Shown here: positions 1,156 to 45,429 of the stretch, in pieces
Layout of the letters: each line of letters opens with the position of its first letter
Position numbering within the stretch: position 1 is the stretch's first letter
Source of the DNA: Leucoraja ocellata
Taxonomy: Eukaryota
DNA: 64,000 bases
Direction of reading: 5' to 3'
NCBI GenBank assembly: GCA_036785375.1
Contig: JAWMAR010000026.1
Coordinates: 11,966,001 to 12,030,000, forward strand
The notes under the pieces: generated by a model
What the model saw: the letters and a program-made list of their open reading frames with translations, nothing else
What the model was told of the DNA's origin: nothing
Databases searched by the model: none
Translations under genes and position numbers: made by a program

Positions 1156-1156
1156 C

Positions 1157-10691: not shown

Positions 10692-13600
10692 ATGGAAACC
10701 AGTATGATATTTCACTTACTGGCAATCGTTGGGAATATTTGCATAGGCACGACTTTGTTCGTTATTCCATCTGCTTTAGCTTATAAAATGATTTCCGACA
10801 CGTTTACACCTTAATGTAGCTACATGTAAGGTCGTCCCTTTTATTCTACCGTCCGTTTGCCGTCATCAACATAATCACCTTTCCTTGACTGTGTTTCCTA
10901 ACAGGTGGGGAACAGATTTCGTACAACGTACAGCAAATGCCCAAAGAAGTGATTTTACACAAAGGAGGGAACACCACATTCTACTGCATATTCCCCATTT
11001 CTCAAGACCAATCTCGGGTAAGAGTCAAATGGTGGAAACAGGGCGAGAATGAATACCAACGTACAAGTACCGACGGCAGGAAACGTTTTGGCGTGAGTGG
11101 TCGAGCAAGCGGGTACTTTGAGTTGAAGAATGCAAAGATTCAAGATTCTGGAGTGTATCAGTGTTCGGTGATTCGTAAAGGAATGGCTCGAGGAAATTCA
11201 ACCGGATCACGTCTAATAGTATATGGTAAGCGAAAAATAATTGTTTTTTTATCATGGAATATAATGGTTTGCAAACCGAATCACTATGAAGATGTCCTTT
11301 AATGCCTTTTTGTGTATGGTATGTTCAGTATATCTGATCTGCCGCTCTATCTACATTCTGCGAACAAGAGGGTTGAACCTCCGCATGCCTATCCTTCTTT
11401 ATGAAATTCCGTTCCACTTCACTCATCTCGCCAAAATTGGAAACGCGATGTCCGATTTTATAAAATCAAATTAATATTTTTTAAATTCCTTCAAAGTTCA
11501 CCATGGATCTTTAACCTATGGAAATCCAATGTCCAAGAACATATTTCCTTGAATGTTCATTGAGTTGCAGTCGGTTGAATTGTACAGTTTTGCCCAAAGC
11601 AGGATGCAATCGCTCCAGTGTTGTCAGCATTAACTGAAAGTGAACCTCTGCTCATGTTCTACTTCTTTAGTTGGAGAATGATACTCAGATCATATATTTT
11701 AAATGGCCTTGGCCAATTCACTCTGGCATCACCTAATTAATCTCCCTAAATGTTATAATTCTGACGTGAAGCGCAATGGAACGTAATATACAAAGTTCAT
11801 AAATTCATGTTCATAAATCATAGGACCAGACTAAGACCATTCGACCCATCGAGGCTACTGGGCCATTCAATCATAGCTGATCAATATTTCCTTTTTAACC
11901 TAATTTTCCTGTCTTCGACTCATAACCCTTCACATAAAACTCAAAAACCCGTCAATCTCAGTTTAAAAATATAGAAGACTTGGCCGCCACGGCCATCTGA
12001 AGTAATTAGTTCCACAGTTTCATCACCCTCTGACTAAATAAATTCCCCAGTGTCTCCTTTCCAAACGAATGTCCTTTTGTTATGAGACTGTGCCCACTGG
12101 TCTTATACTCTCCCAGTCCTGGAAACACCCTGTCCACATCCACTCTATCCGGGTCCTTACACCATTTGGTAAGTTTCACTAAGGTCCCCTCCATATACTT
12201 CTAAACTACAGATTGCATCGGCCCAGATCCGTCAATCGCTCAATATACGTTAACCCAATCGCCCCCCTGGATAATTCTCGTAAATCTCATCTGAACTATT
12301 TTCAACGCTAGAAAATCCCTCCTCAGATATGGGGGCCCAAAATTGTTTGCAATACTCCAACGCGGTCTGACCATTGCCTTATGAAGCCTCAGCATTACAT
12401 CCCTGTTTTTTTTTTTAAACACTCCAGTCCTCTCTCAATAAATGCTAACGTTTTTAGTTACCGTATGTTGGATTTTAAAGAGGTAGGTAAACATCTTTTA
12501 TTGTATTGGGAAATTATGATAAAGCAATGTCAATAGACAGTAGACAATAGGTGCAGGAGTAGGCCATTCGGCCCTTCGAGCTAGCACCGCCATTCGCTGT
12601 GATCATGGCTGATTATACATAACCTGCCATCTCCCCATATCCCTTGACTCCGCTATCTTTAATAGCTGCATCTAACTCTCGCTTGAAAGCATCCAGAAAA
12701 TCTGCCTCTACCGTCTTCTGAGGCAGAGAATTCCACAGATTCACAACTCTGGGTGAAAAAGGTTTTCCTCATCTCCGTTCTAAATGGCCTACGCCTTATT
12801 CTTAAAATATGCCCCCTGGTACTGGACTCCCCCAACATCTGGCCAGGTTTCCTCCCTCTAACATGTCCAATCCCTTAATAGTCTTCTATGCTTCAATAAA
12901 TCCACTCCCATCCTTCTAAATTTCAGTGTATACAAGCCCAGCCACTCCATTCTTTCAACATATGACTGTCCCGCCAGCCCGGGAATTAACCTTCGAAATA
13001 TTACCAGAGTAAAACACAAATCCTACCACCTATTCACATTACAATAGCAGAAGACAAGGAAATATATGTCTCAGGAACATTCACTTGGAAACGTTTCTTA
13101 TCATAAACACGGTCTGAACACATTGCTACTTGGAGTCTCAGAGTTGCACAGCACAGGAACAGCCTTCCGGTCCTCCAAGTCCATCCGACCTATTTCTCCA
13201 TCTACTCAAATTCAATTTACCAGCGTTAGGTCCTTATCTACTACGAGTTGCCTATTATAATGTCTGTGAATCCCCAGGGCCTGATGGTCGGCATCCCAGG
13301 GTACTTACGGAAGTGGCTCTAGATATCGTGGACACATTGGTGATAATTTTACAATGTTCTATAGACTCGGGATCAGTTCCTGTGGATTGGAGGTTAGCAA
13401 ATGTCATCCCACTTTTCAAGATAGGTGGGAGAGAGAAAACGGGGAATTATAGGCCAGTTAGCCTGACATCGGTGGTGGGGAAGATGCTGGAGTCAATTAT
13501 AAAAGATGAGATAGACGCACATTTGGATAGCAGGATCAGGATCAGTCCGAGTGTGCATGGATTTACAAGGGGAAATCATGCTTGACTAATCTTCTGGAAT

Positions 13601-16547
13601 TTTTTGAAGATGTAAGTAGGAAAATGGACAAGGGAGAGCCAGTGGACGTAGTGTACCTGGACTTTCAGATAGCATTTGATAAGATCCCACATTGGAGATT
13701 AGTGGGCAAAATTAGGGCACATTGGGGGTAGAGTGCTGACATGAATAGAGAAGTGGTTGGCAGACAGGAAACAAAAAGTAGGGATTAACGGGTCCCTTTC
13801 AGAATGGCAGGCAGTGACTAATGGGGTACCGCAAGGCTTGGTGCTGGGACCGCAGCTATTTACAATATACATCAATGATTTGGATGAAGGGGTTCAAAGT
13901 AACATTAGCAAATTTGCAGATGACACAAAGCTGGGTGGCAGTGTGAACTATGAGGAGGATGCTATGAGAATGCAGTGTGACTTGGACAGGTTGTGGCAGT
14001 GGGCAGATGCATGGCAGATGAAGTTTAATTCGGATAAATGTGAGGTTATCCCCCCCCCCCCCCTCCCCCGCCCCACCCCCCACCCCCTCCAAGGACAGCC
14101 ATGACGGAACAATCACAACATTCGTTCAATGTTGAATCCAGAACTGCCGCGAATACTCTAAATGTTGATTTACGCTTTTGGTAAAGTTAAGGTTTACCAT
14201 TTATATTGTATGTCCTCGCCTATGAAGGTACGCCTGAAAGAGTTGATATAGTTCGCAGGATGTAATGTGTTGGTAAAACAACATATTTTCCTCACCATTT
14301 TCTGTGCCCCTGCTCTGCTTCTTCTGCAAAACCGACTCGCTTTCTCACTTGATCATTAATGATGCGCAGAAAACTCATCGTTATCTTTGAGTAAATAACT
14401 CAGAGAATCCCATCGTGGCAACATATGTCGAGATGTATTAGATTATTTATTCAAACTCTAAGAAGATTAATACATAAATATTTGAATGAAGCGTCATTAT
14501 CACTGAATCGGCAAGACTCGTGAAACACCGACCTGAAAGAGCCATTTGGACCAGGCATGAGCACGTAGTCTAAGTAATATCAAATACATTTTCCAATGCG
14601 TCATCATTACAACCCACTCGAGGTTAATAATAGCAACCCTTCAACGGCGTAATGTGATTTAATTTTGTTCATGTTCTGTTCTGCAGCAGTTCCAACTCCA
14701 CTGAAAATTTTCACAAAGACTCGTGAAAAGAATCCGGCCGCGAGTTGTATTCATGTGTGTGAAACAGCCGCATTCTATCCCGAGAATTTCACGCTTAATT
14801 GGTATAAAAATGGGAACGAAACAACATCGGAAATAAAGATCGAAACAAAGAAGAACGCCGAAGGATTGTATATGGTTTCCAGCTCTTTGATCGCGAGGCC
14901 GCCATTTCAGAGCGATAACAAATATACCTGTTTAATAACTCATGTCTCCCTCAATACTCCAGCCCAGGCTGTCATCGCTGGTTCCGAATGTAACCAAGGT
15001 ACAATGCCACCAAATCCATCCCCTGTTCAGTTCGTAAAAATAAATTACTATTTCTATTTGTTCCAGGCCGCGAGGAAAATTCACCTTAGTTCAATTGAAA
15101 GTTGCAGTTCTTTTTCACGACCGGATGCAATAAACCTGTTATCAATTCGTTGTACATTCGTTTTCAATGAAAATGTCTTATTTGCCCTCCAAAATAGAAA
15201 AAACAAATTTAAACATTTTGCCTCTCTATTGGGTAGTGTTGATGTTTCTTTCATGTTGCTTTCAAAAATGTTTCCCAATGCACCGTTGATTCCACACTTG
15301 GCGGCACAACTGATTTCAGGCGCTTAGGTTTTCCCTCACGCTTCCTCGGTTTTTATCCTGATGCCGAATCCTTTGCTTCGCCGTGATCACCTTCGCTAAA
15401 ATCCAACCACCCCTGCTCCCGAAATCCCTCGGTGCGGCATCCACTCCCACTGCCACCGTGACAAATTCAAGTACGGAATTCTAAAAGAAGAGAGGCTTCA
15501 ATTGAGGCGTCAATACCGTCGCCAACGGACACGGTATCATTTAGTAAATTGACAGAATAGGGGGAATGTCTTCAATTAGGAGGATTCAGGGAGAGAAGGG
15601 GGCTAGGAAGGGGAGAGGGGTTATGGAGGGAGGGAGTGGCTGTGGGTAGGGGAAAGGAGTGGGAGGGAGAGGTGATGGAGGGAGTGGGGAGGGGAGGAGG
15701 AGGGGAAAGAAGAGGAAGGATGTAGAGGAGGAGGAGGAGGGAATGCTGGGGCAAGAGGGGGAATAGAGGAGGATAGGGGTAGGATGAGGGATGGCGAGGC
15801 GCAGTTGGGGGAGGGTTGCCATGAATCGCGTCATAACGGGGATCCCTGGCGTCACAACGGGAACCCCTCAGCCACTCCTGCGCAGTTTGGGGATATGGGT
15901 CAGTGGCGGGATTTTGCCTTGGACGGGCCTGGTGTAGTCTCCTATAATCGTTGCACCTGTCAACTTAATACTATGTCCCTATTCTTTGATATTGCTATCC
16001 ATGCAAAAAGATTCTGACTGGCTACACTATCTATGTCTCTCATAATTTTGTATACTTCTATCAGGTCTCCCTTCAATCTTCCACATGTTTGTTCAATCCC
16101 CACTTGCAGCAAATGCCCCTTAATTCAGGCAACATTTTGTAAACTTCTTCACATCCTTCCTGTAATGAGGCGGCAATAACTGCACGTATTATTACAAATG
16201 CTTTCTAGCTAAAGCGCCAGGGAGCCGTATCATGACTCCCTGACGGTTCAATGCCGCGACCAATGAAGGCAAACACGCCACACGCCTTCTTTACCACTCT
16301 TTCTACTGGTGTTGTCACTTTCAGGAAGCTATTGATCACGACCTCAACATTCCTCTGCGGATCAATATTGTAAAGGGCCATTAACCGTATACTTTCCCTT
16401 TACATTTAACCATGAAATATATGGATTTACAATTGCATCTGGTGATTGTTAATTTAGATATCGAATTTAGCTATCAATATTATAAGCAATGGTGGGTACA
16501 TTAAATTCACCAGTTTTCCAATTATGTAAAACTCTCCCTTTCACCAA

Positions 16548-16627
<80 letters not shown>

Positions 16628-17867
16628 TAATTTGTTCCTATTATTTCTGCAGTTAATGCTTTCGCCTTCCACATTAGACCTGCTCTGGGCTTCCTGGTGC
16701 TCCTGATCCTGATTGGTGCCGTTATTGGGACGCACTGTCAGTTGCTGTTTTATAAAAGGTACGTTATATATGGAAAAAATATGTTTGTACAATATTTCAT
16801 GGAATTAGGAAAGATATTTGCGAACGTTTGTGTATGGCGCAGAGGATCATAAATATAATTATAATTTAAATCTGAAGGACTTGGACTGTGATGTAAATTC
16901 TTTGAAATGCCAATATATTCTTGGCAACTTAGCATGAAGAATTATACACAGCGTTGACAGTAAGAGGAACTGGTTGCAAGTAAATTAACTATAAGCATCG
17001 GTGAATGCTCAAGTTGTTTATTCTGGTTAAATCCAATGAGCTGGCAAGGAATCCAAGAGCCGGTAAGATCACGCTCCCTCTCGTGCAACTTTTGTCTTCA
17101 ATCATTCTTCGCCGGTAATATTCAATATTGAAGAGTGTTGAAGCGCAGATATTTTGTCAAATGCAAAGAGCAAAGTTTCATGTTTCTCTAAAGTCTGCAT
17201 CCAGACTGATGAAACATGCAAGTCATGCCAAGATGCATATTTTCCACGAGAAGATGCGAATATCCGTCGTCTTTTCACTTTCAATTTGAAATTATTTCCC
17301 GAAGAATAGGCGAAAATAGTGTAAAATTACCTGCAAAATCCTTATCAATTGTTTCTATGTTCCTCAATTGCATTTACACCTAAAACGCAGAGATAAAAAA
17401 ACGGCATAAATAAAATAAAACTTGAAAGAAATTCAGGTTCAGCCAGACCCAGATTCCCCCCCCCCCCCCCCCCCTCTTGCTCCCTCTCAATCTGGGTTTT
17501 AAACCAGCAATGAAAAATGATGACTTCAGTCTCTACAAATTTTACTTCATGCGATGAGTCCACTCACTCTTTTTTAAACTTAAAATACTTACGGTTTTCA
17601 ATCCCTTTGGAGTAAATGGGATAAAAGTAAACTTTTGTCTTTACTGAAATTTGATGTTATTTATAACTGTTGAATATATTTTATCCGCCTGAGAAAATAT
17701 CCTTAAACTATCTTCTATAGAACAAATGTTTGCATAATTAAATTGTACCGATAGTTAGCATGGTTTTCTCCACCCTCTCTTGTTTGTGCAGGGTCCATGT
17801 AAGAAAAAGCCATCAAATAGAGAGTGTTGGAAACCTCAAGCAGGATCAACCAAGCGCCACCCAATGA
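10692..17867 (+). CDS. Gene A: VJ-C1 Ig-superfamily receptor, activating type (SIRP-beta/NKp30-like architecture), 5 exons
   Basis: Exons: 10692-10746 (leader METSMIFHLLAIVGNICI, GC donor), 10905-11225 (V), 14687-14998 (C1), 16653-16758 (TM VNAFAFHIRPALGFLVLLILIGAVIGTHCQLLFYK), 17792-17867 (RVHVRKSHQIESVGNLKQDQPSATQ*). Intron phases 1,1,1,2 are all compatible and the frame is open throughout. Confidence 0.85.
10905..11225 (+). CDS. Gene A exon 2: V-set Ig domain with germline-joined J-like G strand
   Basis: ttcctaacag acceptor and G|gtaag donor, phase 1/1. Motifs TFYC, VKWWKQ, DSGVYQC, STGSRLIV. Confidence 0.93.
11810..14052. mobile_element. Cluster of degenerate CR1 fragments in gene A intron 2 (paralogous cluster 33480-35740 in gene B)
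   Basis: Minus-strand 3' fragments at 11810-12990; plus-strand RT fragment at 13268-14052 (SPGPDG, NYRPVSLTS, FADD). Confidence 0.85.
14687..14998 (+). CDS. Gene A exon 3: C1-set Ig domain
   Basis: ctgcag acceptor and G|gtac donor. C1 hallmarks VCETAAFYP, LNWYKNG, GLYMVSSSL, YTCLITH. Confidence 0.93.
15589..15815 (+). repeat. G/A-rich polypurine low-complexity tract
   Basis: gggagagaaggggg...gaggaggagg runs begin exactly where similarity to copy 2 ends. Confidence 0.85.
16549..16626 (+). repeat. (CA)n microsatellite just upstream of the gene A TM exon
   Basis: Perfect CA dinucleotide run. Confidence 0.97.
16653..16758 (+). CDS. Gene A exon 4: transmembrane segment with Arg (IRPALGFLVLLILIGAVIG)
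   Basis: Polypyrimidine plus ctgcag acceptor just after a (CA)n tract; AG|gtacgt donor; hydrophobic 20-mer. Confidence 0.8.
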
Positions 17868-25436: not shown

Positions 25437-25574
25437 ATTGCACTGTGGGACATCACGGGAGAATCGCGATGGAGTTAATCGCCACAGGAAGGAAAAGTGG
25501 TACAAAAATAAAGGAAATAATTGGATTTATGTGAACAGGCCTAGAATCGAAGATTTTCCTTCTGTTTCGTAGGA

Positions 25575-28710: not shown

Positions 28711-29132
28711 ATATTCCGTGAAATAATCCTGATTAGGCGTTCAAACTACTGTATTACAATCCATCAGTATTATATTCCAGCTGTTCCCAAATGCAACTGC
28801 CTTGCAAATACTCGTTTTCTCAATCTTATTCTGTTTTAAAATAGTGGGATAACAGTTTCTACAATTTTTTAGAATTGTTTGAGATCAATAGGACGTTTGC
28901 GCGTCTGACAAAACCATCCATGATTTCGTTCCCACATGTGACATTAATAGACGGAATAAGGAATTTGTGAGGTAACATCTATGATAGACAAGTTGCTGGA
29001 GAGGATTCTGTAATATAATATCGACATATTTGAATAAAGGGGGGCTGAGTAGACATAACCAGCATGGTCAGGTACATGTGAGATTGTGTCCCACAAATTT
29101 GATTGAGTTTCCTGAAGAAATAACCAAGTACA

Positions 29133-29365
29133 TGGGCGGCAAGGTGGTTCAGCGGTAGAGCTACTGCCTTCCAGCGCCAGAGAAATGGGTTCGATCCTGA
29201 CCGCGGGTGCTTCACGCAGTTTGTACGTTCTCACCTTGACCTGCGTGTATTTTCTCCAAGATCTTCGGTTTCCTCTCACACAACAAATACGTAGAGGTTT
29301 GAAAGTTAATTGGCTTGGAATAAAAGTAAAAAGTGTCACCAGTACGTGCAGGATAGTGTTAATAC
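29133..29365 (+). mobile_element. tRNA-derived V-SINE (HE1-like)
   Basis: Box A/B-like ggtggttcagcggtagag...gggttcgatcc, followed by a tttgtacgttctc..gacctgcgtg core. Confidence 0.6.
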
Positions 29366-30368
29366 ATAGATACATAGAAAATAGGTGCAGGAGTAGGCCA
29401 TTCGGCCCTTCGAGCCTGCACCGCCATTCAATATGATCATGGCTGATCATCCAACTCAGTATCCCGTACCTGCCTTCTCTCCATACCCCTGATCATTTTA
29501 GCCACATCTAACTCCTTCTTAAATATAGCCAATGAACTTGCCTCAACTACCCTCTGTGGCAGATATAAGATCCCCTCTCAATCTCCTAAATTCTAGCGAG
29601 TATAAGCCAAGTCTATCCAGTCTTTCTTCATATGAAAGTCCTGACATCCCAGGAATCAGTCTGATGAACCTTCTCTGCACTCCCTCTATGGCAATAATGT
29701 CCTTCCTCAGATTTGGAGACCAAAACTGTACGCAATACTCCAGGTGTGGTCTCCCCGAGACCATGTACAACTGCAGTAGAACATCCCTGCTCCTATACTC
29801 AAATCCTTTTGCTATGAAAGTTAACATACCATTCGCTTTCTTCACTGCCTGCTGCACCTGCATGCCTACTTTCAATGACTGGTGTACCATGACACCCAGG
29901 TCTCGTTGCATCTCCCCTTTTCCTAATCGGCCACCATTTAGATAATAGTCTGTTTTTCTGTTTTTGCCACCAAAGTGGATAACCTTACATTTATCCACAT
30001 TATACTGCATCTGCCAAACATTTGCCCACTCACCCAGCCTATCCAAATCACCTTGCAGCCTCCCAGCATCCTCCTCACAGCTAACACTGCCCCCCAGCTT
30101 CGTGTCATCCGCAAACTTGGAGAAGTTGCATTCAATTCCCTCGTCCAAATCATTAATATATATCGTAAATAGCTGGTGTCCCAGAACTGAGCCTTGCGGT
30201 ACCCCACTAGTCACTGCCTGCCATTGTGAAAAGGACCCGTTCACTCTTACTCTTTGCTTCCTGTTTGCCAACCAGTTCTCTATCCACATCAATACTGAAC
30301 CCCCAATACCGTGTGCTTTAAGTTTGTATACTAATCTCTCATGTGGGACCTTGTCGAAAGCCTTCTGG
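29366..30368 (-). mobile_element. CR1 LINE RT/3' fragment
   Basis: ORF 29543-30406 with QKAFDKV, GVPQGS and FADD; 3' stem-loop and tail. Confidence 0.9.
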
Positions 30369-32360
30369 ATGTGCGGTCGTAGGTCGGCGCGGACTCGGTG
30401 GGCCAAAGAACGCTGTATCTAAGGACAAGGCTGCAGAAAGGCCTTTGATACTGTTTTGCATCATATCACTGGTGACCATCGGACTATCGTTGATTCGGAC
30501 TTTGCTGGGACCTTGCACTAAACGTTGTTCCTGTAACATTTGTCTCTACACGAAATGGTCAGTTGTAGTCATGTATTGTCTTTCCGCTGACTGAATAACA
30601 AGCAACAAAAGCTTTTCACTGTACCTCGGTACACGTGTCAATAAACTAACGTGAAACTTATGGCTGACTATATTCCTTCACATCAACTTCAGAATAAAAA
30701 AAATAAAAAAGGGAGAATGCGGAGTCAAATATTTTATTGATAAACATTATTCCAGATGCGTGAAGTTAATAAAAGTGATATTTTCTTTTAATTCTGGCAC
30801 CGTTTTGCACAAACTGTTCACGACACAGAAATACATCGTTCAACCTTTATCAAGAGAGAAATAAAAATCGTAGTTTAACATGTGTTTCAATTACAGATTA
30901 AAGTGAAAGAAAATTGCCATATCATTCCCCTAATCCAATAAAACTGAAATTGCCAGGTAGTGGAACAACCAAAGAACACATATATATTTCACACCGAGCA
31001 GACGAAATTCTTGATCATCATTTTCATATTAGATAATATGTAATCAGCAGAACGAATGTTAGGCTTATGCACTTGATACTGTTAGGAATTCACTCTTACA
31101 GTTTTCAAAGTTATGCTTAAGTCATGAATACCGCGCATTAGAAACGGATCAGTTAATAGTTATACGAGCACAACCACCAATCCGTACTGTTTCCATAAAC
31201 GATGTTTTGCACGCATAAACTGTTTATTCTCATTGTTCAATCCGCCGATAGATGATTACGTTGGTCGGTCGTTAGAGAAGCGAAGCTGTTCTAACGGCTG
31301 GGAATGATGGTCTGAGCTGTGTGAACTTGAAGGATGCAATGAGTCTTTCGGCTATCCTATCGCTGAACACCTCCGCTTAGTCCGCCTTAACCTACCTGAT
31401 CTCCCAGTTGCTCAGCACTTTAACGGCCCCTCCCATTCCCAATCTGACCTTTCTGTCCTGGGCCTCCTCCATTGTCAGAGTGAGGCCCAGCGCAAATTTG
31501 AGGAACAGCAACTCATACTTCTATAACCTCAAATAGACCTTGCTTTCCCCCTCTCTCCATCTCCTCCCCTTTCCAGTTCTCCCACCAGTCTTACTGTCTC
31601 CGACTACATTCTATCCGTGTCCCGCCCATTCCCCTGACATCGGTCTGAAGCAGGGTCTCGACCCGAAACGTCACCCATCCCTCCTCTCCAGAGATGCTGC
31701 CTGTCCCGTTGAGTTACTCCAGCATCTTGTGTCTATCTTCGAATTATCCCAGCATCTGCAGTTCTTTCCTACACGATGCAACGAGAATCCGGCTTGATCA
31801 ACGCTCGGTCCCAGTGCCTCTACCCAACCGCCCACTGAATCACGACATGGAACACAAGTGATCACGGACTGACACATAAGCAGATGCTGATCGATGGAGC
31901 ACACGCTCGAGTCAACAACCAGCGTATCAGGCATTTATTTTTGCAGTCTGCGAAAAAATCCTACTTACTATTGGCAAATTGATTTTGAATATCGATGATA
32001 GTCCAAACGGTGCAAAAAAAAAATGGTATTAATGAATTAATTGTGGACGTAAATGGGGCATGTCTGCTTGAAATCTTGCCAATTTTCTATGTCATCATTT
32101 CTATGTCTTATATGATCGAGAATTAAATTTAAAATCGAGAGTAGGAGTAAAAGCACTAAGAAGAATAAAATTTAAATTATAATTTCCACTACTTTGCTAC
32201 GCGCGGCCGATTTGATTTTAGAAATCCAACCAGTCTAATGATAATTGCAACCTTCGGTTACAGGATATGAATCATCGTTCATCGGCTGTAAACCACGCCC
32301 TCACTTTACACTTGCCAACGCTGCTTTCTGCCGACAAACTAGTTGTAGCTGGTGGCCGGA

Positions 32361-35300
32361 ATGGAAACCAGTATGATATTTCACTTACTGGCAGTCGTTG
32401 GGAATATTTGCATAGGCACGACTTTGTTCGTTGTTCCATCTGCTTTAGCTTATAAAATGATTTCCGACACGTTTACACCTTAATGTAGCTACATGTAATG
32501 TCGTCCCTTTTATTCAACCGTCCGTTTGCCGTCATCAACATAATCACCTTTCCTTGACTGTGTTTCCTAACAGGTGGGGAACAGATTTCGTACAACGTAC
32601 TGCAAATACCCAAAGAAGTGATTTTACACAAAGGAGGGAACACCACATTCTACTGCATATTCCCCATTTCTCAAGACCAATCTCGGGTAAGAGTCAAATG
32701 GTGGAAACAGGGCGAGAATGAATACCAACGTACAAGTACCGACGGCAGGAAACGTTTTGGCGTGAGTGATCGAGGAAGCGGGTACTTTGAGTTGAAGAAT
32801 GCAAAGATTCAAGATTCTGGAGTGTATCAGTGTTCGGTGATTCGTAAAGGAATGGCTCCAAGAAATTCAACCGGATCGCGTCTAATAGTATATGGTAAGC
32901 GAAAAATAATTGTTTTTTATCATGGAATATAATGGTTTGCAAACCGAATCACTGTGAAGATGTCCTTTAATGCCATTTTGTGTATGGTATGTTCAGTATA
33001 TCTGATCTACCGCTCTATCTACATTCTGCGAACAAGAGGGTTGAACCTCCGCATGCCTATCCTCCTTTATGAAATTCCGTTCCACTTCACTCATCTCGCC
33101 AAAATTGGAAACACGATGTCCGATTTTATAAAATCAAATTAATATTTTTTAAATTCCTTCAAAGTTCACCATGGATCTTTAACCTATGGAAATCCAATAA
33201 GTCCAAGAACATATTTCCTTGAATGTTCATTGAGTTGCAGTCGGTTGAATTGTACAGTTTTGCCCAAAGCAGGATGCAATCGCTCCAGTGTTGTCAGCAT
33301 TAACTGAAAGTGAACCTCTGCTCATGTTCTACTTCTTTAGTTGGAGAATGTTACTCAGATCATATATTTTAAATGGCCTTGGCCAATTCACTCTGGCATC
33401 ACCTAATTAATCTCCCTAAATGTTATAATTCTGACGTGAAGCGCAATGGAACGTAATATACAAAGTTCATAAATTCATGTTCATAAATCATAGGACCAGA
33501 CTAAGATCATTCGACCCATCGAGGCTACTGGGCCATTCAATCATGGCTGATCAATATTTCCTTTTTAACCTAATTTTCCTGTCTTCGACTCATAACCTTT
33601 CACATAAAACTCAAAAACCCGTCAATCTCAGTTTAAAAATATAGAAGTCTTGGCCGCCACGGCCATCTGAGGTAATTAGTGCCACAGTTTCATCACCCTC
33701 TGACTAAATAAATTCCTCAGTGTCTCCTTTCCAAACGAATGTCCTTTTGTTATGAGACTGTGCCCACTGGTCTTATACTCTCCCAGTCCTGGAAACACCC
33801 TGTCCACATCCACTCCATCCGGGTCCTTACACCATTTGGTAAGTTTCAATAAGGTCCCCTCCATATACTTCTAAACTACAGATTGCATCGGCCCAGATCC
33901 GCCAATCGCTCAATATACGTTAACCCAATCGCCCCCTGGATAATTCTCGTAAATCTCATCTGAACTATTTTCAACGCTAGAAAATCCCTCCTCAGATATG
34001 GGGGCCCAAAATTGTTTACAATACTCCAACGCGGTCTGACCATTGCCTTATGAAGCCTCAGCATTACATCCCTGTTTTTTTTTAAAAAACATTCCAGTCC
34101 TCTCTCAATAAATGCTAACGTTTTTAGTTACCGTATGTTGGATTTTAAAGAGGTAGGTAAACATCTTTTATTGTATTGGGAGATTATGATAAAGCAATGT
34201 CAGTAGACAGTAGACAATAGGTGCAGGAGTAGGCCATTCGGCCCTTCGAGCTAGCACCGCCATTCGCTGTGATCATGGCTGATCATACATAACCTGCCAT
34301 CTCCCCATATCCCTTGACTCCGCTATCTTTAATAGCTGCATCTAACTCTCGCTTGAAAGCATCCAGAAAATCTGCCTCTACTGTCTTCTGAGGCAGAGAA
34401 TTCCACAGATTCACAACTCTGGGTGAAAAAGGTTTTCCTCATCTCCGTTCTAAATGGCCTACGCCTTATTCTTAAAATGTGGCCCCTGGTACTGGACTCC
34501 CCCAACATCTGGCCAGGTTTCCTCCCTCTAACATGTCCAATCCCTTAATAGTCTTCTATGCTTCAATAAATCCACTCCCATCCTTCTAAATTTCAGTGTA
34601 TACAAGCCCAGCCACTCCATTCTTTCAACGTATGACTGTCCCGCCAGCCCGGGAATTAACCTTCGTCACAAAAATAGTGTCGAAATATTATCGGAGTAAA
34701 ACACAAATCCTACCACCGATTCACATTACAATAGCAGAAGACAAGGAAATATATGTCTCAAGAACATTCACTTGGAAACGTTTCTTATCATAAACACGGT
34801 CTGAACACATTGCTACTTGGAGTCTCAGAGTTGCACAGCACAGGAACAGCCTTCCGGTCCTCCAAGTCCATCCGACCTATTTCTCCATCTACTCAAATTC
34901 AATTTACCAGCGTTAGGTCCTTATCTACTACGAGTTGCCTATTATAATGTCTGTGAATCCCCAGGGCCTGATGGTCGGCATCCCAGGGTACTTACGGAAG
35001 TGGCTCTAGATATCGTGGACACATTGGTGATAATTTTACAATGTTCTATAGACTCAGGATCAGTTCCTGTTGATTGGAGGTTAGCAAATGTTATCCCACT
35101 TTTCAAGATAGGCGGGAGAGAGAAAACGGGGAATTATAGGCCAGTTAGCCTGACATCGGTGGTGGGGACGATGCTGGAGTCAATTATAAAAGATGAGATA
35201 GCCGCACATTGGGATAGCAGTAACGGGATCAGTCCGAGTGAGCATGGATTTACAAGGGGAAATCATGCTTGACTAATCTGGAAGTTTTTGAAGATGTAAG

Positions 35301-38300
35301 TAGGAAAATGGACAAGGGAGAGCCAGTGGACGTAGTGTACCTGGACTTTCAAAACGCATTTGATAAGATCCCACATTGGAGATTAGTGGGCAAACTTAGG
35401 GCACATGGTATTGGGGGTAGAGTGCTGACATGGATAGAGAAGTGGTTGGCAGACAGGAAACAAAGAGTAGGGATTAACGGGTCCCTTTCAGAATGGCAGG
35501 CAGTGACTAGTGGGGTCCCGCAAGGCTTGGTGCTGGGACCGCAGCTATTTACAATATACATCAATGATTTGGATGAAGGGGTTCAAATTAACATTAGCAA
35601 ATTTGCAGATGACACAAAGCTGGGTGACAGTGTGAACTATGAGGAGGATGCTATGAGAATGCAGTGTAACTTGGACAGATTGTGGGAGTGGGCAGATGCA
35701 TGGCAGATGAAGTTTAATGCGGATAAATGTGAGGTTATCCCCCCCCCCCTCCCCCGCCCCATCCCCACCCCCTCCAAGGACAGCCATGACGGGACAATCA
35801 CAACATTCGTCCAATGTTGAATCCAGAACTGCCGCGAATACTCTAAATGTTGATTTACGCGTTGGGTAAAGTTCTTACATAAGGTACTACCATTAATATT
35901 GTATGTCCTCGCCTATGAAGGTACGCCTGAAAGAGTTGATATAGTTTGCAGGATGTAATGTGTTGGTAAAACAACATATTTTCCTCACCATTTTCTGTGC
36001 CCCTGCTCTGCTTCTGCTGCAAAACCGACTCGCTTTCTCATTTGATCATTAATGATGCGCAGAAAACTCATCGTTATCTTTGAGTAAATAACTCAGAGAA
36101 TCCCATCGTGGTAACATATGTCGAGTTGTATTAGATTATTTATTCAAACTAAGAAGATTAATACATAAATATTTGAATGAAGCGTCATTATCACTGAATC
36201 GGCAAGACTCGTGAAACACCGACCTGAAAGAGCCATTTGGACCAGGCATGAGCACGTAGTCTAAGTAATATCAAATACATTTTCCAATGCGTCATTATTA
36301 CAACGCACTCGAGGTTAATAATAGCAACCCATCAACGGCGTAATGTGATTTAATTTTGTTCATGTTCTGTTCCGCAGCGCTTCCAACTCCACTGAAAATT
36401 TTCACCAAGACTAGTGAAAAGAATCCAGCCGCGAGTTGTATTCATGTGTGTGAAACAGCCGCATTCTATCCCGAGAATTTCACGCTTAATTGGTATAAAA
36501 ATGGGAACGAAACAACATCGGAAATAAAGATCGAAACACAGAAGAACGCCGAAGGATTGTATATGGTTTCCAGCTCTTTGATCGCGAGGCCGCCATTTCA
36601 GAGCGATAACAAATATACCTGTTTAATAACTCATGTCTCCCTCAATACTCCAGCCCAGGCTGTCATCGCTGGTTCCGAATGTAACCAAGGTACAATGCCA
36701 CCAAATCCATCCCCTGTTCAGTTCGTAAAAATAAACTACTATTTCTATTTGTTCCAGGCCGCGAGGAAAATTCACCTTAGTTCAATTGAAAGTTGCAGTT
36801 CTTTTTCATTTAAAATAAAACGACCGGATGCAACAAACCTGTTATCAATTCGTTGTACATTCGTTTTCAATGAAAATGTCTTATTTGCCCTCCAAAATAG
36901 AAAAACAAATTTAAACATGTTGCCTCTCTATTGGGTAGTGTTGATGTTTCTTTCATGTTGCTTTCAAAAATGTTTCCCAATGCACCGTTGATTCCACACT
37001 TGGCGGCACAACTGATTTCAGGCACTTAGGTTTTCACTCACGCTTCCTCGGTTTTTATTCTGATGCCGAATCCTTTGCTTCGCCGTGATCACCTTCGCTA
37101 AAATCCAACCACCCCTGCTCCCGAAATTGCTCGGTGCGGCATCCACTCCCACTGCCACCGTGACAAATTCAAGTACGGAATTCTAAAAGAAGAGAGGCTT
37201 CAATTGAGGCGTCAATACCGTCGCCAACGGACACGGTATCATTTAGTAAATTGACAGAATAGGGGGAATGTCTTCAATTAGGAGGGTTCACACCCATCCC
37301 CTCACATTGCAGTCGCACAGCCTATCAATGGCGTGCAATACAGCAGCGTTTAGGTCCCTAAACCAACAGCTCGTTTCGAAAATCAATTCAGCATAACAAA
37401 TTTGTCCGATATTTTAATTACTTCAGGGTATATATTGTAAGACTTAGGGCTTGTCCTACTTGGGCGTCATTTACGCGACATCATTTACTTACATTGTAAG
37501 TCGTCCTACGTATACAGTTTTTTATCTTACGCTGTCCTGTATTTGCGGTGCTTCCGGTAGAGTTGCCAATCCTGTCTCACTTTCACCACGAGCATTGAGC
37601 ATCACCCTACCCCCAACCGCCCCAAGTTCGGGAAGAATAGCTGGCAACCACCATAACATGTATTCCTACAAACCCTACAGGTTCTGCCGGCAAACTACCT
37701 TCGGTCGTGGCTTCTGGTTGTGCGGTGGGTGGATTGTTTATTTCAGTGCTAATTATCGTTATTTGGTTGCGGTGCCGCAAGCAGAAAAATAAGGGTAAGT
37801 TCTAGCGATAACAATGAACTGTAATATTAATCGTTGGGGTCAACGATAGTGACTGTTTCAGCAACATCTCAGTTCAGTCAATGCCTTTAATCGGAACTAA
37901 TACCCGAATAGCCAGTCCATTGAGAGTGCACAATGGGGAAAGGCCAATCAAGGACACTGTGAGGTCACCAATGGCTAAGTAACAGAGATTCGTGGTCTGC
38001 TATAAACTTTCAAAGTATAGATTGTCTCTTACAGGCAGCACAAAGTAGTGTACAAGTAACACAAGCACCCAACGTTCACAAAATCGTCCGAATCCATGAG
38101 CAGGATAAAGAAAATACAAACATATACAAATTAGGAGAGGCATGGGTAGGGTAGACTGTCAGAACGATTTTCCCGGGAATAAAATATCAAATACAAGAGG
38201 GTATAGATTTAGGTGTGAGGGGTAACGTTTGGAGATGTAGGTGGGCCGAAGGGTGTTTTCTTCTATCGTCTCAAATTCCCACGTATTTCCTTGTAACCTA

Positions 38301-39526
38301 TTATGCACGTCATTTTTCCTGCCAATCGCCTACTGTGAGTTAAGAGACTGTTCATTTGACCTAACCAGTGTTCGCTGCAATGTGGCAGAATCTGGAGCAA
38401 TGGCGTAAACATATGCGATCAAAAAATTCCATAGTGGAAGCTGCTAACGTCACAATTGAACCAAGGATGCCGAATCCACGAGGCAATTAGATGAACTACT
38501 GCAGCGTAGTAATACTTCTGGCTTCATTCTGAGTATACGTAGATTTGTAATTACTGTCTGAAATTCAGTAAATGATTCTGCCTTTTTTATACTATTTTTT
38601 CCAGGTAAAGAGGAAAGTTTTGGTGAACCAAATCGTCACGAGCAGCTGGTATATTTATGTTTTTATTGCAGCATGGCATTTACAGAGGGCAATGCTATAA
38701 AATAAGCGATCTGACAAACATATTCGAACCGTTTATTTATATATAGCGAACACACTTGGCCATTTCAATGATAGATTGAACTCAAAATAGATAACATTTC
38801 AATGGCCAAGTGTGTAAAACCAATAGCTTATTCTTAAAACGTATACCGGTAAAACACTGTCATTACGTTGCTTTATTCATTGTATTTGAAAAAAGACATT
38901 TTGGCTTTTGAAGCCACAGTTCTTGTAAAGTCATTGATTCATAGTACCCCCCAATTTACCCCTTTGAACATCAACTCGGCGGCCACTGTTTTATTTTGGC
39001 GATTTTATGTACATAAATGCATACGTGAATGCACCTCGTCTTTATTTTGGGAAAAAAACATTTACAATGCGACAGAAGGACATGAAAGCGTCGAGTCACA
39101 TAATAAGAACTTTTCTTTCCGAATGATGCAGGGAGCAGAAGCTGCGACCGGTTATATCGCCGCCACGCATTTGAGCAAACCCAATTGCATTCCAAAACGA
39201 AAACGGGATGGTGTGCAAACCTCGTATGGTCAGGTGAGGCTGTTTGATTAGCAAAATAGATAACAATCAAAGCACGTGAAGGCTGACGGTTTCACATGCG
39301 ACTTGAGAAGCAATATCAAAAGCTAGTAAAACAATGAATTAACTGTGTTTAAAAAAACTGCTTACAGAGAGTGCGGGAGAATTCAAGTGACGAGCTGTCG
39401 TATGCGAACTTAGCATTCACTGGCAAGAGGAATGTGAGAAAATGCACAGAAAAGGCAGAGTATGCCGAGCTACAGATAAACAAACACAGCGGAGCAGCAG
39501 AGGTTGCCTATTCAACAGTAAGATGA
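32361..39526 (+). CDS. Gene B: VJ-C1 Ig-superfamily receptor, inhibitory type with ITIMs (SIRP-alpha-like tail), 7 exons
   Basis: Exons: 32361-32415 (leader, GC donor), 32574-32894 (V), 36378-36689 (C1), 37681-37794 (TM GSAGKLPSVVASGCAVGGLFISVLIIVIWLRCRKQKNK), 38605-38648 (GKEESFGEPNRHEQL), 39132-39233 (GAEAATGYIAATHLSKPNCIPKRKRDGVQTSYGQ), 39368-39526 (RVRENSSDELSYANLAFTGKRNVRKCTEKAEYAELQINKHSGAAEVAYSTVR*). Phases 1,1,1,1,0,0. Confidence 0.88.
32574..32894 (+). CDS. Gene B exon 2: V-set Ig domain
   Basis: 321-nt phase 1/1 exon with 7 nucleotide differences from the gene A V exon. Confidence 0.93.
36378..36689 (+). CDS. Gene B exon 3: C1-set Ig domain
   Basis: ccgcag acceptor, G|gtac donor; FYP, W and YTCLITH motifs. 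Confidence 0.93.
37681..37794 (+). CDS. Gene B exon 4: uncharged transmembrane segment plus basic stop-transfer
   Basis: ccctacag acceptor, G|gtaagt donor; VVASGCAVGGLFISVLIIVIWL followed by RCRKQK. Confidence 0.85.
39368..39526 (+). CDS. Gene B last exon: ITIM-bearing cytoplasmic tail
   Basis: cttacag acceptor. LSYANL and VAYSTV fit the ITIM consensus (I/L/V/S)xYxx(L/V); AEYAEL is ITIM-like. Ends at TGA 39524-39526. Confidence 0.85.
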   Translation, partial: RVRENSSDELSYANLAFTGKRNVRKCTEKAEYAELQINKHSGAAEVAYSTVR

Positions 39527-45200: not shown

Positions 45201-45429
45201 CTAGACTAAGTGGGACCTGTTGGGTCCCATGTTCACATGGGAGGGCTGGTCCCCCGACGCAATATGCCATCTCTCCACCAATTCCAATATTGGTGGCCAA
45301 TGGGGGGGGGGGTTCTGGAGTGCTGGTATGGGTTCTTTGGGTGGCAGCTCAGTCCCTCAAGCCTGATCTGTTGGCAGCTCACTCACGGCTGGTGGGCTGG
45401 CAGTTGACTCATGACTATTCCTTGAAATT

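What the first reader, a model, noticed from the sequence alone, without database searches (positions are those of the whole stretch)
10692..39526. Paired activating/inhibitory receptors with near-identical V-C1 ectodomains and opposite signalling tails
Seen in sequence: genes A and B share leader, V and C1 exons almost letter for letter (V 7 nt and C1 6 nt differences by my count), but they splice to non-homologous TM and tail exons. A has IRPALGFLVLLILIG and a ~30-aa tail with no tyrosine motif. B has a neutral TM and LSYANL/AEYAEL/VAYSTV. Established: an Arg near the N-terminal end of the TM is how NKp30, NKp46 and LILRA couple to FcR-gamma/CD3-zeta, and ITIMs recruit SHP-1/2, as in the paired families SIRPa/b, KIR, PIR, CD300 and NITR. 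Inference: this is a very recently homogenised paired-receptor system in an elasmobranch, possibly with A as an activating counterpart against pathogen mimics of B's ligand. The TM and tail exons do not appear as such in the ORF track, so this structure is easily missed.
Basis: partly seen in the sequence, partly recalled or inferred. Interest (0 to 1): 0.92.

Follow-up and report, generated by a model that had tools for sequence, protein, structure and literature searches.

The report
Paired Arg-TM and ITIM ray receptors
Two neighbouring immune-receptor genes of a cartilaginous fish share an almost identical outer part through a recent duplication but carry opposite-looking signalling ends, a familiar design seen here in a little-studied gene family, and not yet shown to be expressed.

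Summary
Genes A and B share leader, V (7 nt differences) and C1 (6 nt) exons, then run into unrelated 3' ends. A has an Arg-bearing TM exon (16653-16758).

The near-identity is not exon-specific. A ~18-22 kb tandem segmental duplication is 2.0% diverged in exons and in introns/TEs alike, and ends sharply at 15588/37290.

A's TM exon is a diverged copy of the family's TM exon. Its Arg sits in the alignment column where short-tailed, ITIM-less relatives from other sharks and rays also have Arg (6 of 6, against 19 of 29 non-Arg relatives with ITIMs).

The family is found only in cartilaginous fish in my searches. It carries only automatic names ("SIRP-alpha-like", "tapasin-related-like").

Expression is untested. 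Three RNA runs gave no read on any A or B exon laid, so they say nothing either way.

I read it as a real, recently born activating-type/inhibitory pair (confidence 0.6): a new member of a known kind.

Earlier unchecked notes of this scan list similar VJ-C1 pairs elsewhere in this genome.

The parts
1..15588 (+). Duplicated unit, copy 1: intergenic DNA with TEs plus gene A's leader, V and C1, and 590 nt of the intron after C1
   Evidence: 1-1923, 3597-4276, 4270-4540, 4537-5254, 5547-5871 and 8957-15588 match 17947-37290 in the same order at 89-99%. The match at position 1 is cut by the window edge.
17947..37290 (+). Duplicated unit, copy 2, carrying gene B's leader, V and C1. It has extra TE insertions at about 20785-25431, 25703-26965 and 27685-30305.
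   Evidence: 135 substitutions in 6617 aligned columns (2.04%), with 18 gap events.
10692..10746 (+). Gene A leader exon (METSMIFHLLAIVGNICI-G), phase 1, inferred GC donor ATAG|GCACGA
   Evidence: It resembles the N-terminus of Hypanus P0002. No GT donor lies in phase. The splice was not seen in RNA.
10905..11225 (+). Gene A V exon: VJ-type V domain with a germline-joined J-like end (GNSTGSRLIVY)
   Evidence: Pfam V-set E 1.5e-8. AlphaFold model pLDDT 88. Foldseek neighbours are shark vNAR, NKp30, Ig-beta and TCR V-alpha.
14687..14998 (+). Gene A C1 exon, ending in SECNQ with a membrane-proximal Cys
   Evidence: Pfam C1-set E 1.4e-10. Best PDB matches are UrIg2, IgM, SIRP-alpha and SIRP-gamma. 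Splice sites.
15589..15815 (+). Start of A's unique segment: a roughly 230-nt polypurine (G/A) tract directly after the homology breakpoint
   Evidence: Very high word depth in DNA run X1 shows it is repetitive.
16545..16627 (+). (CA)n microsatellite 25 nt upstream of the TM exon's acceptor
16653..16758 (+). Gene A TM exon (V)NAFAFHIRPALGFLVLLILIGAVIGTHCQLLFYK. Phase 1 in, phase 2 out. Read through, the frame runs on to the TAA at 16850-16852.
   Evidence: blastp-short matches family TM regions (P0044 E 2.5e-4, with a shared IG..CQL end). Arg sits at the family's Arg column. The exon region is present in DNA run X1 with Arg kept. No RNA reads.
32361..32415 (+). Gene B leader exon (I>V at the site matching 10725)
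32574..32894 (+). Gene B V exon: 7 nt differences from A, 6 of them amino-acid changes
36378..36689 (+). Gene B C1 exon: 6 nt differences from A, 3 of them amino-acid changes
37681..37794 (+). Gene B TM exon (G)SAGKLPSVVASGCAVGGLFISVLIIVIWLRCRKQKNK, with no charge in the TM. Gly stands where the Arg-type relatives have Arg.
   Evidence: 68% identity over 22 aa to Hypanus and Hemitrygon TM regions (E about 5e-5).
38605..38648 (+). Gene B small cytoplasmic exon (KEESFGEPNRHEQL), phase 1 to 0, needed to keep the frame.
   Evidence: acceptor tattttttccag, donor CTG|gtatat. Matches EECFTEANRSE of Hypanus P0002. Gene C has a like exon at about 52655-52621.
39368..39526 (+). Gene B last exon: RVRENSSDELSYANL...AEYAEL...VAYSTVR, then stop. 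Two canonical ITIMs and one ITIM-like motif. Poly(A) signals at 39740 and 39797.
   Evidence: The whole CDS sums to a multiple of 3.

Best explanation
A and B are two real neighbouring genes of a large receptor family restricted, as far as seen, to cartilaginous fish. Family members have a leader, a germline-joined VJ-type V domain, one C1 domain, a TM segment and a tail.

A tandem segmental duplication or unequal crossover of about 18-22 kb, now 2% diverged, placed the same promoter region, leader, V and C1 in front of two different, older 3' ends.

B keeps the family's usual inhibitory end: a neutral TM, a small cytoplasmic exon and a tail with two ITIMs. By analogy with other ITIM receptors, these would recruit SHP-type phosphatases when phosphorylated (inferred).

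A ends in a diverged family TM exon with an Arg at the position where short-tailed, ITIM-less relatives carry Arg. By analogy with NKp30, NKp46 and TCR-alpha it would need an acidic ITAM adaptor (zeta/FcR-gamma type) to reach the surface and signal (inferred).

Both would then bind the same or nearly the same ligand and give opposite signals.

Shown: the gene anatomy, the duplication, the homology of both TM exons to the family, and the family-wide link between Arg and loss of ITIMs.

Inferred: that A is transcribed and spliced as drawn, the adaptor, the phosphatases, the ligand and any role against pathogens.
For: Duplication and breakpoints:
- Self-alignment and site lists.

Gene models:
- All exons are open, with fitting phases and good splice sites. 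CDS sums are divisible by 3 for A (read-through) and for B.
- None of the 18 gap events of the 6.6-kb alignment falls in the 688 exonic bases (my own estimate of the chance is about 0.14).

Domains:
- Pfam V-set and C1-set in both copies.

Family:
- 181 proteins at E<=0.001 and 64 at E<=1e-10.
- All those named among the close ones are chondrichthyan, under automatic names only.
- A's TM exon matches family TM regions.

Arg column:
- In the TM alignment, 6 of 35 representatives have Arg at or next to A's column. All 6 lack ITIMs, with a median tail of 12 aa.
- 19 of the 29 others have ITIMs, with a median tail of 93 aa (Fisher p=0.005).
- On a V-domain tree of 61 rows, at least 9 Arg/ITIM switches are needed. 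A/B is one of three very close opposite pairs.

Neighbour gene:
- Gene C in the same window has Arg-Pro-Ala in its TM like A, and a B-like tail that has lost its ITIMs.

Independent DNA:
- Run X1, which differs from the window by about 1%, holds A's TM-exon region with the Arg codon kept. Differences are 16693 (synonymous) and 16751 (Y>D).
- X1 also holds a contig that leaves A's path exactly at 15588.

Adaptor rule:
- An Arg in the top half of the TM is how NKp30 and NKp46 are thought to bind zeta/gamma (PMC13107469, passage of section 2.4.3).
Against: - No transcript evidence. In RNA runs X6, X10 and X13 (about 5, 6 and 25 in 100 of each run read), depth was 0 over 14600-15599 and 16600-17399. 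That covers the C1 exon, A's TM exon and the read-through. The C1 exon is 98% like B's, so B was not seen either. The tissues are unknown and the runs carry a different organism code from the DNA holders.
- Since the duplication the exons have changed as fast as the introns, with 10 replacement and 4 silent changes. There is no sign of purifying selection on either copy.
- Hydropathy places A's Arg just outside the best 19-23-residue window, so it could be a flanking residue.
- A's TM exon ends in phase 2, unlike B's (phase 1). No convincing downstream exon was found. The nearest AATAAA is 560 nt past the read-through stop. A's 3' end is therefore undefined.
- The TM matches are short and hydrophobic, so their E-values are soft.
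- The Arg/ITIM census is not phylogenetically independent and rests on automatic gene models.
Confidence: 0.6

Rival explanations
1. A is a recent chimeric duplicate that is dead or dying. The duplication put a copy of the ectodomain exons in front of leftover DNA. That DNA happens to hold an old, no longer used TM exon of a former family gene. A makes no stable membrane protein. Only B, and gene C, work.
For: - Zero RNA reads on A's exons.
- Exons are as diverged as introns, with 10 of 14 changes being replacements.
- The TM exon has an odd exit phase, a 4-residue insertion relative to the family and lost basic stop-transfer residues (IGTHC instead of IGKRC).
- No defined tail exon and no nearby poly(A) signal.
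- The exon sits among a purine tract, a TE fragment and a (CA)n repeat.
Against: - The RNA test was blind to B as well, so it does not single out A.
- All four A exons are open with good splice sites.
- No indel in any exon.
- The Arg column and short tail fit a recurrent family type.
- The TM-exon region is kept open in a second DNA data set.
- An earlier, unchecked note (s1-884918) reports a further VJ+C1+TM gene just upstream of the window. That would make the A-type unit itself repeated.
Confidence: 0.25
2. A is expressed, but its Arg is only a juxtamembrane residue. A would then be a short-tailed, non-signalling form: a decoy, a co-receptor, or a partner chain disulfide-linked through the membrane-proximal Cys to B or another chain. 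It would not be an adaptor-coupled activating receptor.
For: - The best hydrophobic windows start after Arg-Pro.
- Both A and B end the C1 exon with SECNQ, a free Cys next to the membrane.
- Some ITIM-type relatives also have a flanking Arg further out, for example P0011.
Against: - By alignment to the family TM, A's Arg lies about 6 residues inside the ancestral helix, replacing the Gly of the AGC/SGC motif.
- That same column is Arg in ITIM-less relatives of at least five other species.
Confidence: 0.1
3. A and B are one locus assembled twice: two haplotypes, or an assembly join error.
For: - The copies differ by 2%, which is not far from the roughly 1% between the window and DNA run X1.
- The A-side junction at 15588 lies in a repetitive purine tract that short contigs do not bridge.
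Against: - The window has no N.
- Each copy carries its own kilobase-scale TE insertions, and the copies lie in tandem with different flanks.
- X1 holds both the unique A segment (pieces 16135-18666) and a contig that departs at 15588, as B does. Word depth over the shared C1 part (75-77) is about twice that of the unique part (23-41). The tool warns that depth is no copy number.
- The repeat appears to run on upstream of the window (position 1 aligns with 17947; note s1-884918). Two haplotypes would not give that.
Confidence: 0.05

Closest known systems
SIRP family (SIRP-alpha inhibitory, SIRP-beta1 activating, SIRP-gamma)
   Same: - Paired receptors with near-identical ectodomains and opposite ends.
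- N-terminal V domain with a J-like end, followed by C1-set domain(s).
- Tyrosine motifs in the inhibitory form and a basic TM residue in the short-tailed form.
- The C1 exon hits SIRP-alpha and SIRP-gamma chains at E 3e-13 and 8e-13.
- NCBI's pipeline names many relatives 'SIRP-alpha-like' or 'SIRP-beta-1-like'.
   Different: - One C1 domain here, against two in SIRPs.
- Arg here, against Lys/DAP12 in SIRP-beta1 (recalled).
- The V domain shows no special likeness to SIRP V by sequence or fold. No SIRP chain appears among the best 60, or in the listed Foldseek matches.
- IgM and UrIg2 score as well as SIRP for C1.
- Orthology and CD47 binding were not tested.
NKp30/NCR3, and the shark and Xenopus NCR3-type families
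   Same: - Non-rearranging VJ-type V domain.
- Arg in the upper TM, with a short tail in the activating form.
- NKp30 is rank 6 among structural neighbours of the V model (3noi, TM-score 0.77, 22% identity).
- Some relatives (P0005, P0011) lack C1 and are V-TM-tail like NKp30.
   Different: - NKp30 has no C1 domain.
- Sequence searches do not single it out.
- The paper on shark NCR3 family genes (Kinlein et al. 2021, PMC8273117) is not held, so I could not check whether it already covers this family.
UrIg / UrIg2 (non-rearranging shark VJ-C1 genes)
   Same: - Single-exon VJ domain with a split leader, followed by C1 domains, in elasmobranchs (PMC12227049, section 7 read).
- UrIg2 is the best PDB sequence match of the C1 exon (E 5e-15, summed over three domains).
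   Different: - By that section, UrIg2 has nine or more C domains in sharks.
- UrIg and UrIg2 are expressed mainly in liver and gill.
- The section mentions no paired forms, no ITIM and no TM Arg.
- Here there is one C1, and the genes form a large cluster family.
KIR, LILR/PIR, CD300, CEACAM and bony-fish NITR paired families
   Same: Activating members arise again and again from inhibitory ones by duplication plus a changed 3' end. They gain a basic TM residue and lose the ITIM tail. This matches the at least 9 switches on the V tree and gene C's ITIM-less B-like tail.
   Different: - Different domain types (C2/I-set, or V only).
- No sequence relation was tested here.
- NITRs are described from bony fish, not cartilaginous fish (recalled).
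T-cell receptor chains
   Same: - V with J, one C1 domain, a Cys next to the membrane, a TM with a basic residue in its upper half and a very short tail.
- TCR V-alpha domains are among the fold neighbours.
   Different: - No rearrangement signal: the VJ is one exon.
- An ITIM-bearing sister gene exists.
- No evidence of dimer formation or of CD3 coupling.

Membership tests
Paired activating/inhibitory IgSF receptors (the kind, not a gene family) | Two or more linked genes with highly similar ectodomains | tested here: met
   V is 7/321 nt different and C1 6/312 nt. The genes lie 21.7 kb apart on the same strand.
Paired activating/inhibitory IgSF receptors (the kind, not a gene family) | One member has cytoplasmic ITIM(s) | tested here: met
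   B's last exon has LSYANL and VAYSTV, which fit (S/I/V/L)xYxx(I/V/L), plus AEYAEL, which does not. Phosphatase binding was not tested.
Paired activating/inhibitory IgSF receptors (the kind, not a gene family) | The other member has a short tail and a basic TM residue that binds an ITAM adaptor | tested here: inconclusive
   Arg lies at the family's recurrent Arg column. Hydropathy puts it at the membrane edge. The tail is undefined. Adaptor binding cannot be tested with these tools.
Paired activating/inhibitory IgSF receptors (the kind, not a gene family) | Both members are expressed | tested here: inconclusive
   0 reads on the exons of either gene in 3 RNA runs of unknown tissue.
SIRP family | V plus two C1-set domains | tested here: not met
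   Only one C1 exon lies between V and TM in A and in B.
SIRP family | Sequence closer to SIRP than to other V-C1 proteins, or orthology | tested here: not met
   C1 scores UrIg2 and IgM at least as high as SIRP. No SIRP chain is among the best V matches. Synteny could not be tested.
NKp30/NCR3 family | Single VJ-type V ectodomain without a C domain, and an Arg TM | tested here: not met
   A and B have a C1 exon. The V fold is near NKp30 but equally near vNAR, Ig-beta and TCR V.
UrIg/UrIg2 | VJ followed by several C1 domains (three or more), by PMC12227049 section 7 | tested here: not met
   One C1 exon only, with ITIM or Arg-TM ends.
PRARP (chicken non-rearranging IgSF genes, Fu et al. 2019) | Defining features are not at hand. 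The paper is not held and was seen only as a citation in PMC10751288. | not tested
   One search shows the citation only. The search for 'PRARP' found no immunology paper.
Chondrichthyan VJ-C1 'SIRP-like' family (unnamed; automatic annotations only) | The V exon carries W-W-K-x-G-E and D-S-G-V-Y-x-C and ends in G-N-G-T-G-S-x-L-x-V. The C1 exon has PTPLKI, a CETAAFYPE-like strand and Y-T-C-L-V-S-H. The TM has an IIG-K-R/Q-C end. | tested here: met
   - V of A is 63% identical to Hypanus P0002 and 54-57% to shark members.
- Consensus motifs are in alignments A1 and A2.
- tblastn of 16 members maps V, C1 and B's TM exon in the window.
- A's and B's TM exons match family TMs.

The most novel reading that the evidence does not exclude
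The A-type genes have a germline-joined VJ, one C1, a Cys next to the membrane, an Arg in the upper TM and almost no tail. They could be living non-rearranging relatives of the antigen-receptor chain that existed before the RAG transposon. In that reading they already signal through zeta/FcR-gamma-type adaptors, and they sit in a family where fresh duplications keep generating activating/inhibitory pairs. The family would then be both the missing NK-type paired-receptor system of cartilaginous fish and a TM-anchored rival or complement to UrIg2 as a model of the antigen-receptor precursor.
Probability: 0.12. Interest if true: 0.85.

Novelty: new member of a known kind. Interest (0 to 1): 0.55.

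Why it matters
Paired activating and inhibitory receptors are a recurring outcome of host-pathogen conflict in mammals, birds, frogs and bony fish. In cartilaginous fish, the oldest jawed vertebrates with adaptive immunity, they are poorly charted.

This locus catches a pair soon after its birth, at 2% divergence. The breakpoint is still legible, 590 nt behind the C1 exon. It therefore shows the mechanism directly: a segmental duplication that leaves one ectodomain in front of two different signalling ends.

The family has the domain plan of an antigen-receptor chain without rearrangement, and it carries only misleading automatic names in public annotation. If the A-type genes couple to ITAM adaptors, sharks and rays would have a large NK-like receptor system built on VJ-C1 chains. 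That bears on how antigen receptors and their signalling partners came together.

If A proves silent, the locus is just a young duplicate in an ordinary inhibitory receptor cluster.

Tried and rejected
Searches that did not place the family:
- Sequence and profile searches of the V domain against solved structures gave only generic Ig hits: titin, Robo, contactin, PD-L1, TCR, vNAR. No known family stands out.
- Searching the genomic ORF that holds the C1 exon among 5.8 billion proteins gave 1 hit among 15 candidates. It is an unnamed Logan ORF at 99%. No annotated protein of this species is at hand.
- The Logan ORFs P0164 and P0208 are genomic read-throughs, not transcripts.

Comparisons among the 3' ends:
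- Direct likeness among the three TM/tail regions (A, B, C) by blastn and tblastx gave only TE fragments.
- My splice-site scan for tail exons of A found nothing convincing.

RNA:
- No RNA run holds A's unique segment in the index.
- The three RNA runs I laid showed reads only on TE parts.

Slips in my own scripts:
- My first family filter in a script matched nothing because of a wrong pattern. It was fixed.
- My first tree run mislabelled the Arg state because the TM alignment had shifted. I redid it with the earlier alignment kept fixed. One row (P0166) was set to Arg by eye.

Literature:
- Searches for a description of this family were. None turned up a paper on VJ-C1 paired receptors of cartilaginous fish.
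- The most relevant papers are not held. They are Kinlein 2021 (PMC8273117), Flajnik 2012 (PMC3709836), Ohta and Flajnik 2015 (PMC4594805), Ohta 2019 (PMC6761025) and Fu 2019. 'Not in print' is therefore not established.
- No supplementary file was consulted.

Idea considered and dropped:
- That A and B are alternative 3' ends of one gene. Each has its own leader, V and C1.

Full report
**What is there**

The window has no N. A self-comparison shows one large repeat.
- 8957-15588 matches 30622-37290 at 97.0% over 6684 columns.
- Further upstream, 1-1923, 3597-4276, 4270-4540, 4537-5254 and 5547-5871 match 17947-20003, 20107-20784, 25432-25702, 26966-27684 and 30306-30626, in the same order.

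The repeat is therefore a tandem segmental duplication with a period of about 18 to 21.7 kb. The copies differ by kilobase-scale TE insertions. The match at position 1 is cut by the window's edge, so the repeat probably runs on upstream.

Homology ends sharply at 15588 in copy 1 and at 37290 in copy 2. After it, copy 1 has 2358 unique bases (15589-17946):
- a purine tract of about 230 nt;
- a TE fragment;
- a (CA)n run at 16545-16627;
- 25 nt later, the exon at 16653.

Copy 2 runs into unrelated DNA that holds B's TM and tail exons. blastn and tblastx find nothing shared between the two 3' parts except a TE fragment.

**The exons**

I worked exon by exon.

| Exon | Gene A | Gene B |
|---|---|---|
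| Leader | 10692-10746 | 32361-32415 |
| V | 10905-11225 | 32574-32894 |
| C1 | 14687-14998 | 36378-36689 |
| TM | 16653-16758 | 37681-37794 |
| Small cytoplasmic exon | none found | 38605-38648 |
| Last exon | none found | 39368-39526 |

Details:
- Splice sites are good throughout, and both coding sums are multiples of three. For A this holds when its TM exon is read through to the TAA at 16850-16852.
- The leader is an exception. The only donor in the right phase is a GC donor (ATAG|GCACGA), identical in both genes. The leader itself is backed by its likeness to the N-terminus of a stingray relative.
It has counterparts in a stingray protein and in gene C.

Pfam calls V-set (E 1.5e-8 in A, 4.4e-8 in B) and C1-set (1.4e-10 in A, 5.2e-11 in B). 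The V exon ends in a J-like GNSTGSRLIVY, so it is a germline-joined VJ exon.

They are exact: 7 differences in V, 6 in C1 and one more in the leader.
- Of these 14, 10 change the amino acid: 6 of 7 in V, 3 of 6 in C1, and 1 in the leader.
- The exons are no better kept than the rest. There are 14 changes in 688 exonic bases (2.0%) against 121 in 5929 non-exonic aligned bases (2.0%) (with exon ends corrected).
- None of the 18 gap events falls in an exon. By my own estimate, chance alone would give that about one time in seven.

The near-identity is therefore that of a young duplication. It is not a sign that the exons are being kept alike, and neither copy shows purifying selection yet.

One hint of exchange between copies exists. 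An ORF from another public data set (P0164/P0208) has B's intron features but A's residues at two C1 sites. It could equally be old polymorphism.

**The two ends**

B's TM exon reads SAGKLPSVVASGCAVGGLFISVLIIVIWLRCRKQKNK, with no charge in the hydrophobic run. It is 68% identical over 22 residues to stingray relatives. Its last exon holds LSYANL and VAYSTV, which fit the ITIM pattern, and AEYAEL, which does not.

A's exon reads NAFAFHIRPALGFLVLLILIGAVIGTHCQLLFYK.
- It is not random DNA. It matches family TM regions (best E 2.5e-4 in a small library) and shares the ...IG..CQL end. It has a four-residue insertion, and the usual basic residues are replaced (IGTHC for IGKRC).
- It leaves in phase 2, unlike B's exon (phase 1).
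- I found no convincing next exon.
- The nearest AATAAA lies at 17409.

A's 3' end is therefore open. It is either a read-through tail of 31 residues without a tyrosine motif, or a splice I could not predict.

**Is the Arg meaningful?**

On A's own sequence, the best hydrophobic windows start just after Arg-Pro, so it could be an edge residue. The family argues otherwise.

A full HMMER scan with A's V exon found 181 proteins at E<=0.001 and 64 at E<=1e-10. I aligned the TM regions of the 45 that passed my filters: J-like motif, W-W-K-type motif and a clear TM. Three window exons were added.

A's Arg falls in one column that is also Arg in:
- Hypanus P0002;
- Scyliorhinus P0003 and P0082;
- Mobula P0039;
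- Hemitrygon P0028.

Leucoraja P0020 and gene C are one column off. Mustelus P0174 joined when more proteins were added. In B and most long-tailed members this column is Gly, in an AGC/SGC motif about six residues inside the family's TM.

Counting only the 35 representatives at 50% identity:

| Group | Representatives | With ITIM | Median tail |
|---|---|---|---|
| Arg at or next to the column | 6 | 0 | 12 residues |
| No Arg there | 29 | 19 | 93 residues |

Fisher's test gives p=0.005. The rows are related and are automatic gene models, so this is support, not proof.

On a V-domain tree of 61 rows (14 Arg, 30 ITIM, 17 neither; one row set by eye), at least 9 switches between the two types are needed.
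- A/B (path 0.047) is one of three very close opposite pairs.
- The other two pairs join different species: Leucoraja P0020 with Amblyraja P0019, and Hypanus P0002 with Mobula P0170.
- An earlier run of this tree had wrong labels and is not used.

Gene C, on the minus strand of the same window, has SSVRPAVV in its TM, sharing Arg-Pro-Ala with A. Its B-like tail has lost its ITIMs.

That an Arg in the top half of the TM is how NKp30 and NKp46 are thought to join zeta/gamma dimers is stated in PMC13107469, section 2.4.3 (passage read).

**Expression**

This was the decisive test, and it failed to decide.
- No run on record as RNA holds A's unique 1.3 kb in the index.
- I laid three raw-read RNA runs offered under the species label (X6, X10, X13; about 5, 6 and 25 in 100 of each read) and one DNA run (X1) on 14600-20599.
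- RNA depth was 0 from 14600 to 15599 and from 16600 to 17399. That covers the C1 exon, the TM exon and the read-through.
- The only RNA reads lay on repeats (15600-16399, 17400-17599, 18800-19399, 19800-20599).
- B's C1 exon is 98% identical and would have been laid at the 95% threshold, so B was not seen either.

The samples simply do not show this gene pair. Tissues are not given, and the RNA runs carry another organism code than the DNA holders. The result is neither for nor against A.

**The DNA run**

X1 differs from the window by about 1% in the unique segment, so it is probably another individual.
- It holds 16135-16432, 16638-16958, 17024-17625, 17647-18089 and 18136-18666.
- Within and after the TM exon it differs at 16693 (silent), 16751 (Tyr to Asp) and 16825. 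The Arg codon is unchanged.
- One 894-letter contig lies on 15132-15588 and then leaves the stretch exactly at the breakpoint, as B's path does. Its further letters were not shown, so this is consistent with B, not proof.
- Word depth over the shared C1 part (75-77) is about twice that of the unique part (23-41). The tool warns that depth is no copy number.

With the copy-specific TE insertions, this makes an assembly artefact unlikely.

**What family?**

Close relatives are all from cartilaginous fish:
- sharks: Scyliorhinus, Mustelus, Heterodontus, Heptranchias, Chiloscyllium, Carcharodon, Cetorhinus, Rhincodon, Hemiscyllium, Stegostoma;
- batoids: Hypanus, Hemitrygon, Mobula, Narcine, Pristis, Leucoraja, Amblyraja;
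- the chimaera Callorhinchus.

Often many relatives lie on one chromosome-sized contig.

They carry only automatic names: 'tyrosine-protein phosphatase non-receptor type substrate 1-like' (that is, SIRP-alpha-like), 'SIRP beta-1-like', 'tapasin-related protein-like', 'NCR3 ligand 1-like', 'CD276 homolog', and MHC class II beta-like or TCR beta-like.

In the profile search, 37 proteins reached E<=1e-15 among the 8000 candidates scored. Beyond the chondrichthyan ones, only generic multi-Ig proteins appeared.

A and B sit with batoid proteins (Narcine, Hypanus, Mobula) in a starred group of the V tree (topology, reused). Gene C pairs with a sawfish protein. The window is therefore most likely from a ray or skate relative whose proteins are not in the library.

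Relation to named families:
- The C1 exon's best solved relatives are UrIg2, IgM, IgA, SIRP-alpha and SIRP-gamma.
- The V model (pLDDT 88) is nearest in fold to shark vNAR, NKp30 (rank 6), Ig-beta, TCR V-alpha and PD-1.
- The family is not a SIRP (one C1; no special V likeness).
- It is not NKp30 (it has C1).
- It is not UrIg/UrIg2 (these have several C domains and are expressed in liver and gill, by PMC12227049 section 7).

It works like SIRP, KIR or NITR pairs and is built like a TCR chain.

**Literature**

My searches found no paper describing VJ-C1 paired receptors of cartilaginous fish. The papers most likely to bear on it are not held. Foremost is Kinlein et al. 2021 on shark NCR3 family genes, of which I saw only citations. 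I therefore cannot say the family is undescribed.

Earlier first-stage notes of this scan, unchecked, list many VJ-C1 receptor genes and other 'paired' blocks elsewhere in this genome. They also list a VJ+C1+TM gene ending 80 bases before this window.

**Verdict**

It needs three changes:
- The identity comes from a plain recent duplication with a legible breakpoint.
- The case for the Arg rests on family comparison.
- Nothing yet shows that A is expressed.

It is a new member of a well-known kind of system. Interest is moderate to good because of the lineage, the antigen-receptor-like build and the freshness of the event.

Noticed in passing
window 51662-57610, minus strand: Gene C is a third family gene. 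It has a V exon (about 57197-57610), an intact C1 (56426-56746) and a second C1-like exon (55652-55948) that has lost both canonical Cys (VSETSEF, YIYLVSH). Its TM exon (54681 to about 54584) carries SSVRPAVV. It has a small exon at about 52655-52621 and a last exon (51755-51662) that resembles B's tail without ITIMs. It looks like an inhibitory gene turned activating-type by point changes, a second route beside A's swapped 3' end.
   Followed up: partly
window 58848-59138, minus strand: An ORF starts like gene C's V exon (AEETAIHVTQIPE...) and then loses the likeness. It is probably a V-exon fragment or pseudo-exon upstream of gene C. It was not found by tblastn with 16 family proteins.
   Followed up: partly
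window 10746|10747 and 32415|32416: The leader-V intron of both genes has no in-phase GT donor. The only fitting donor is GC (ATAG|GCACGA), which would make it a GC-AG intron. This needs RNA to confirm.
   Followed up: partly
window 14984-14998 and 36675-36689: Both C1 exons end in SECNQ, with a Cys a few residues before the TM. The relatives I looked at do not share it (P0002, P0004). It could allow a disulfide-linked dimer, as in TCR chains.
   Followed up: no
window 20785-30305: Copy 2 of the duplicated intergenic DNA holds insertions absent from copy 1. One is a G+C-rich block around 24000-26000 (GC 0.55). The others are LINE-type reverse-transcriptase ORFs (25883-26974 and 29543-30406, minus strand) with an endonuclease-like ORF (28012-28575). 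So TEs moved in after the duplication.
   Followed up: no
window 45427-47969: Long arrays of roughly 50-nt tandem repeats, 80-90% alike between copies, giving repetitive ORFs on both strands. They lie between gene B and gene C.
   Followed up: no
window 18800-19399: A very abundant repeat. Depth reaches hundreds to about 1500 reads in all three RNA runs and millions of word-depth in the DNA run. It is a highly expressed, high-copy element, also present at 811-1154, 57884-58215 and elsewhere.
   Followed up: no
proteins P0164 and P0208 (Logan contigs, no locus): These are genomic ORFs from another data set, 99% like the C1 ORF. They have B's intron features but A's Arg and Lys at two C1 sites. 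This mosaic suggests gene conversion between copies, a third copy, or shared polymorphism.
   Followed up: partly
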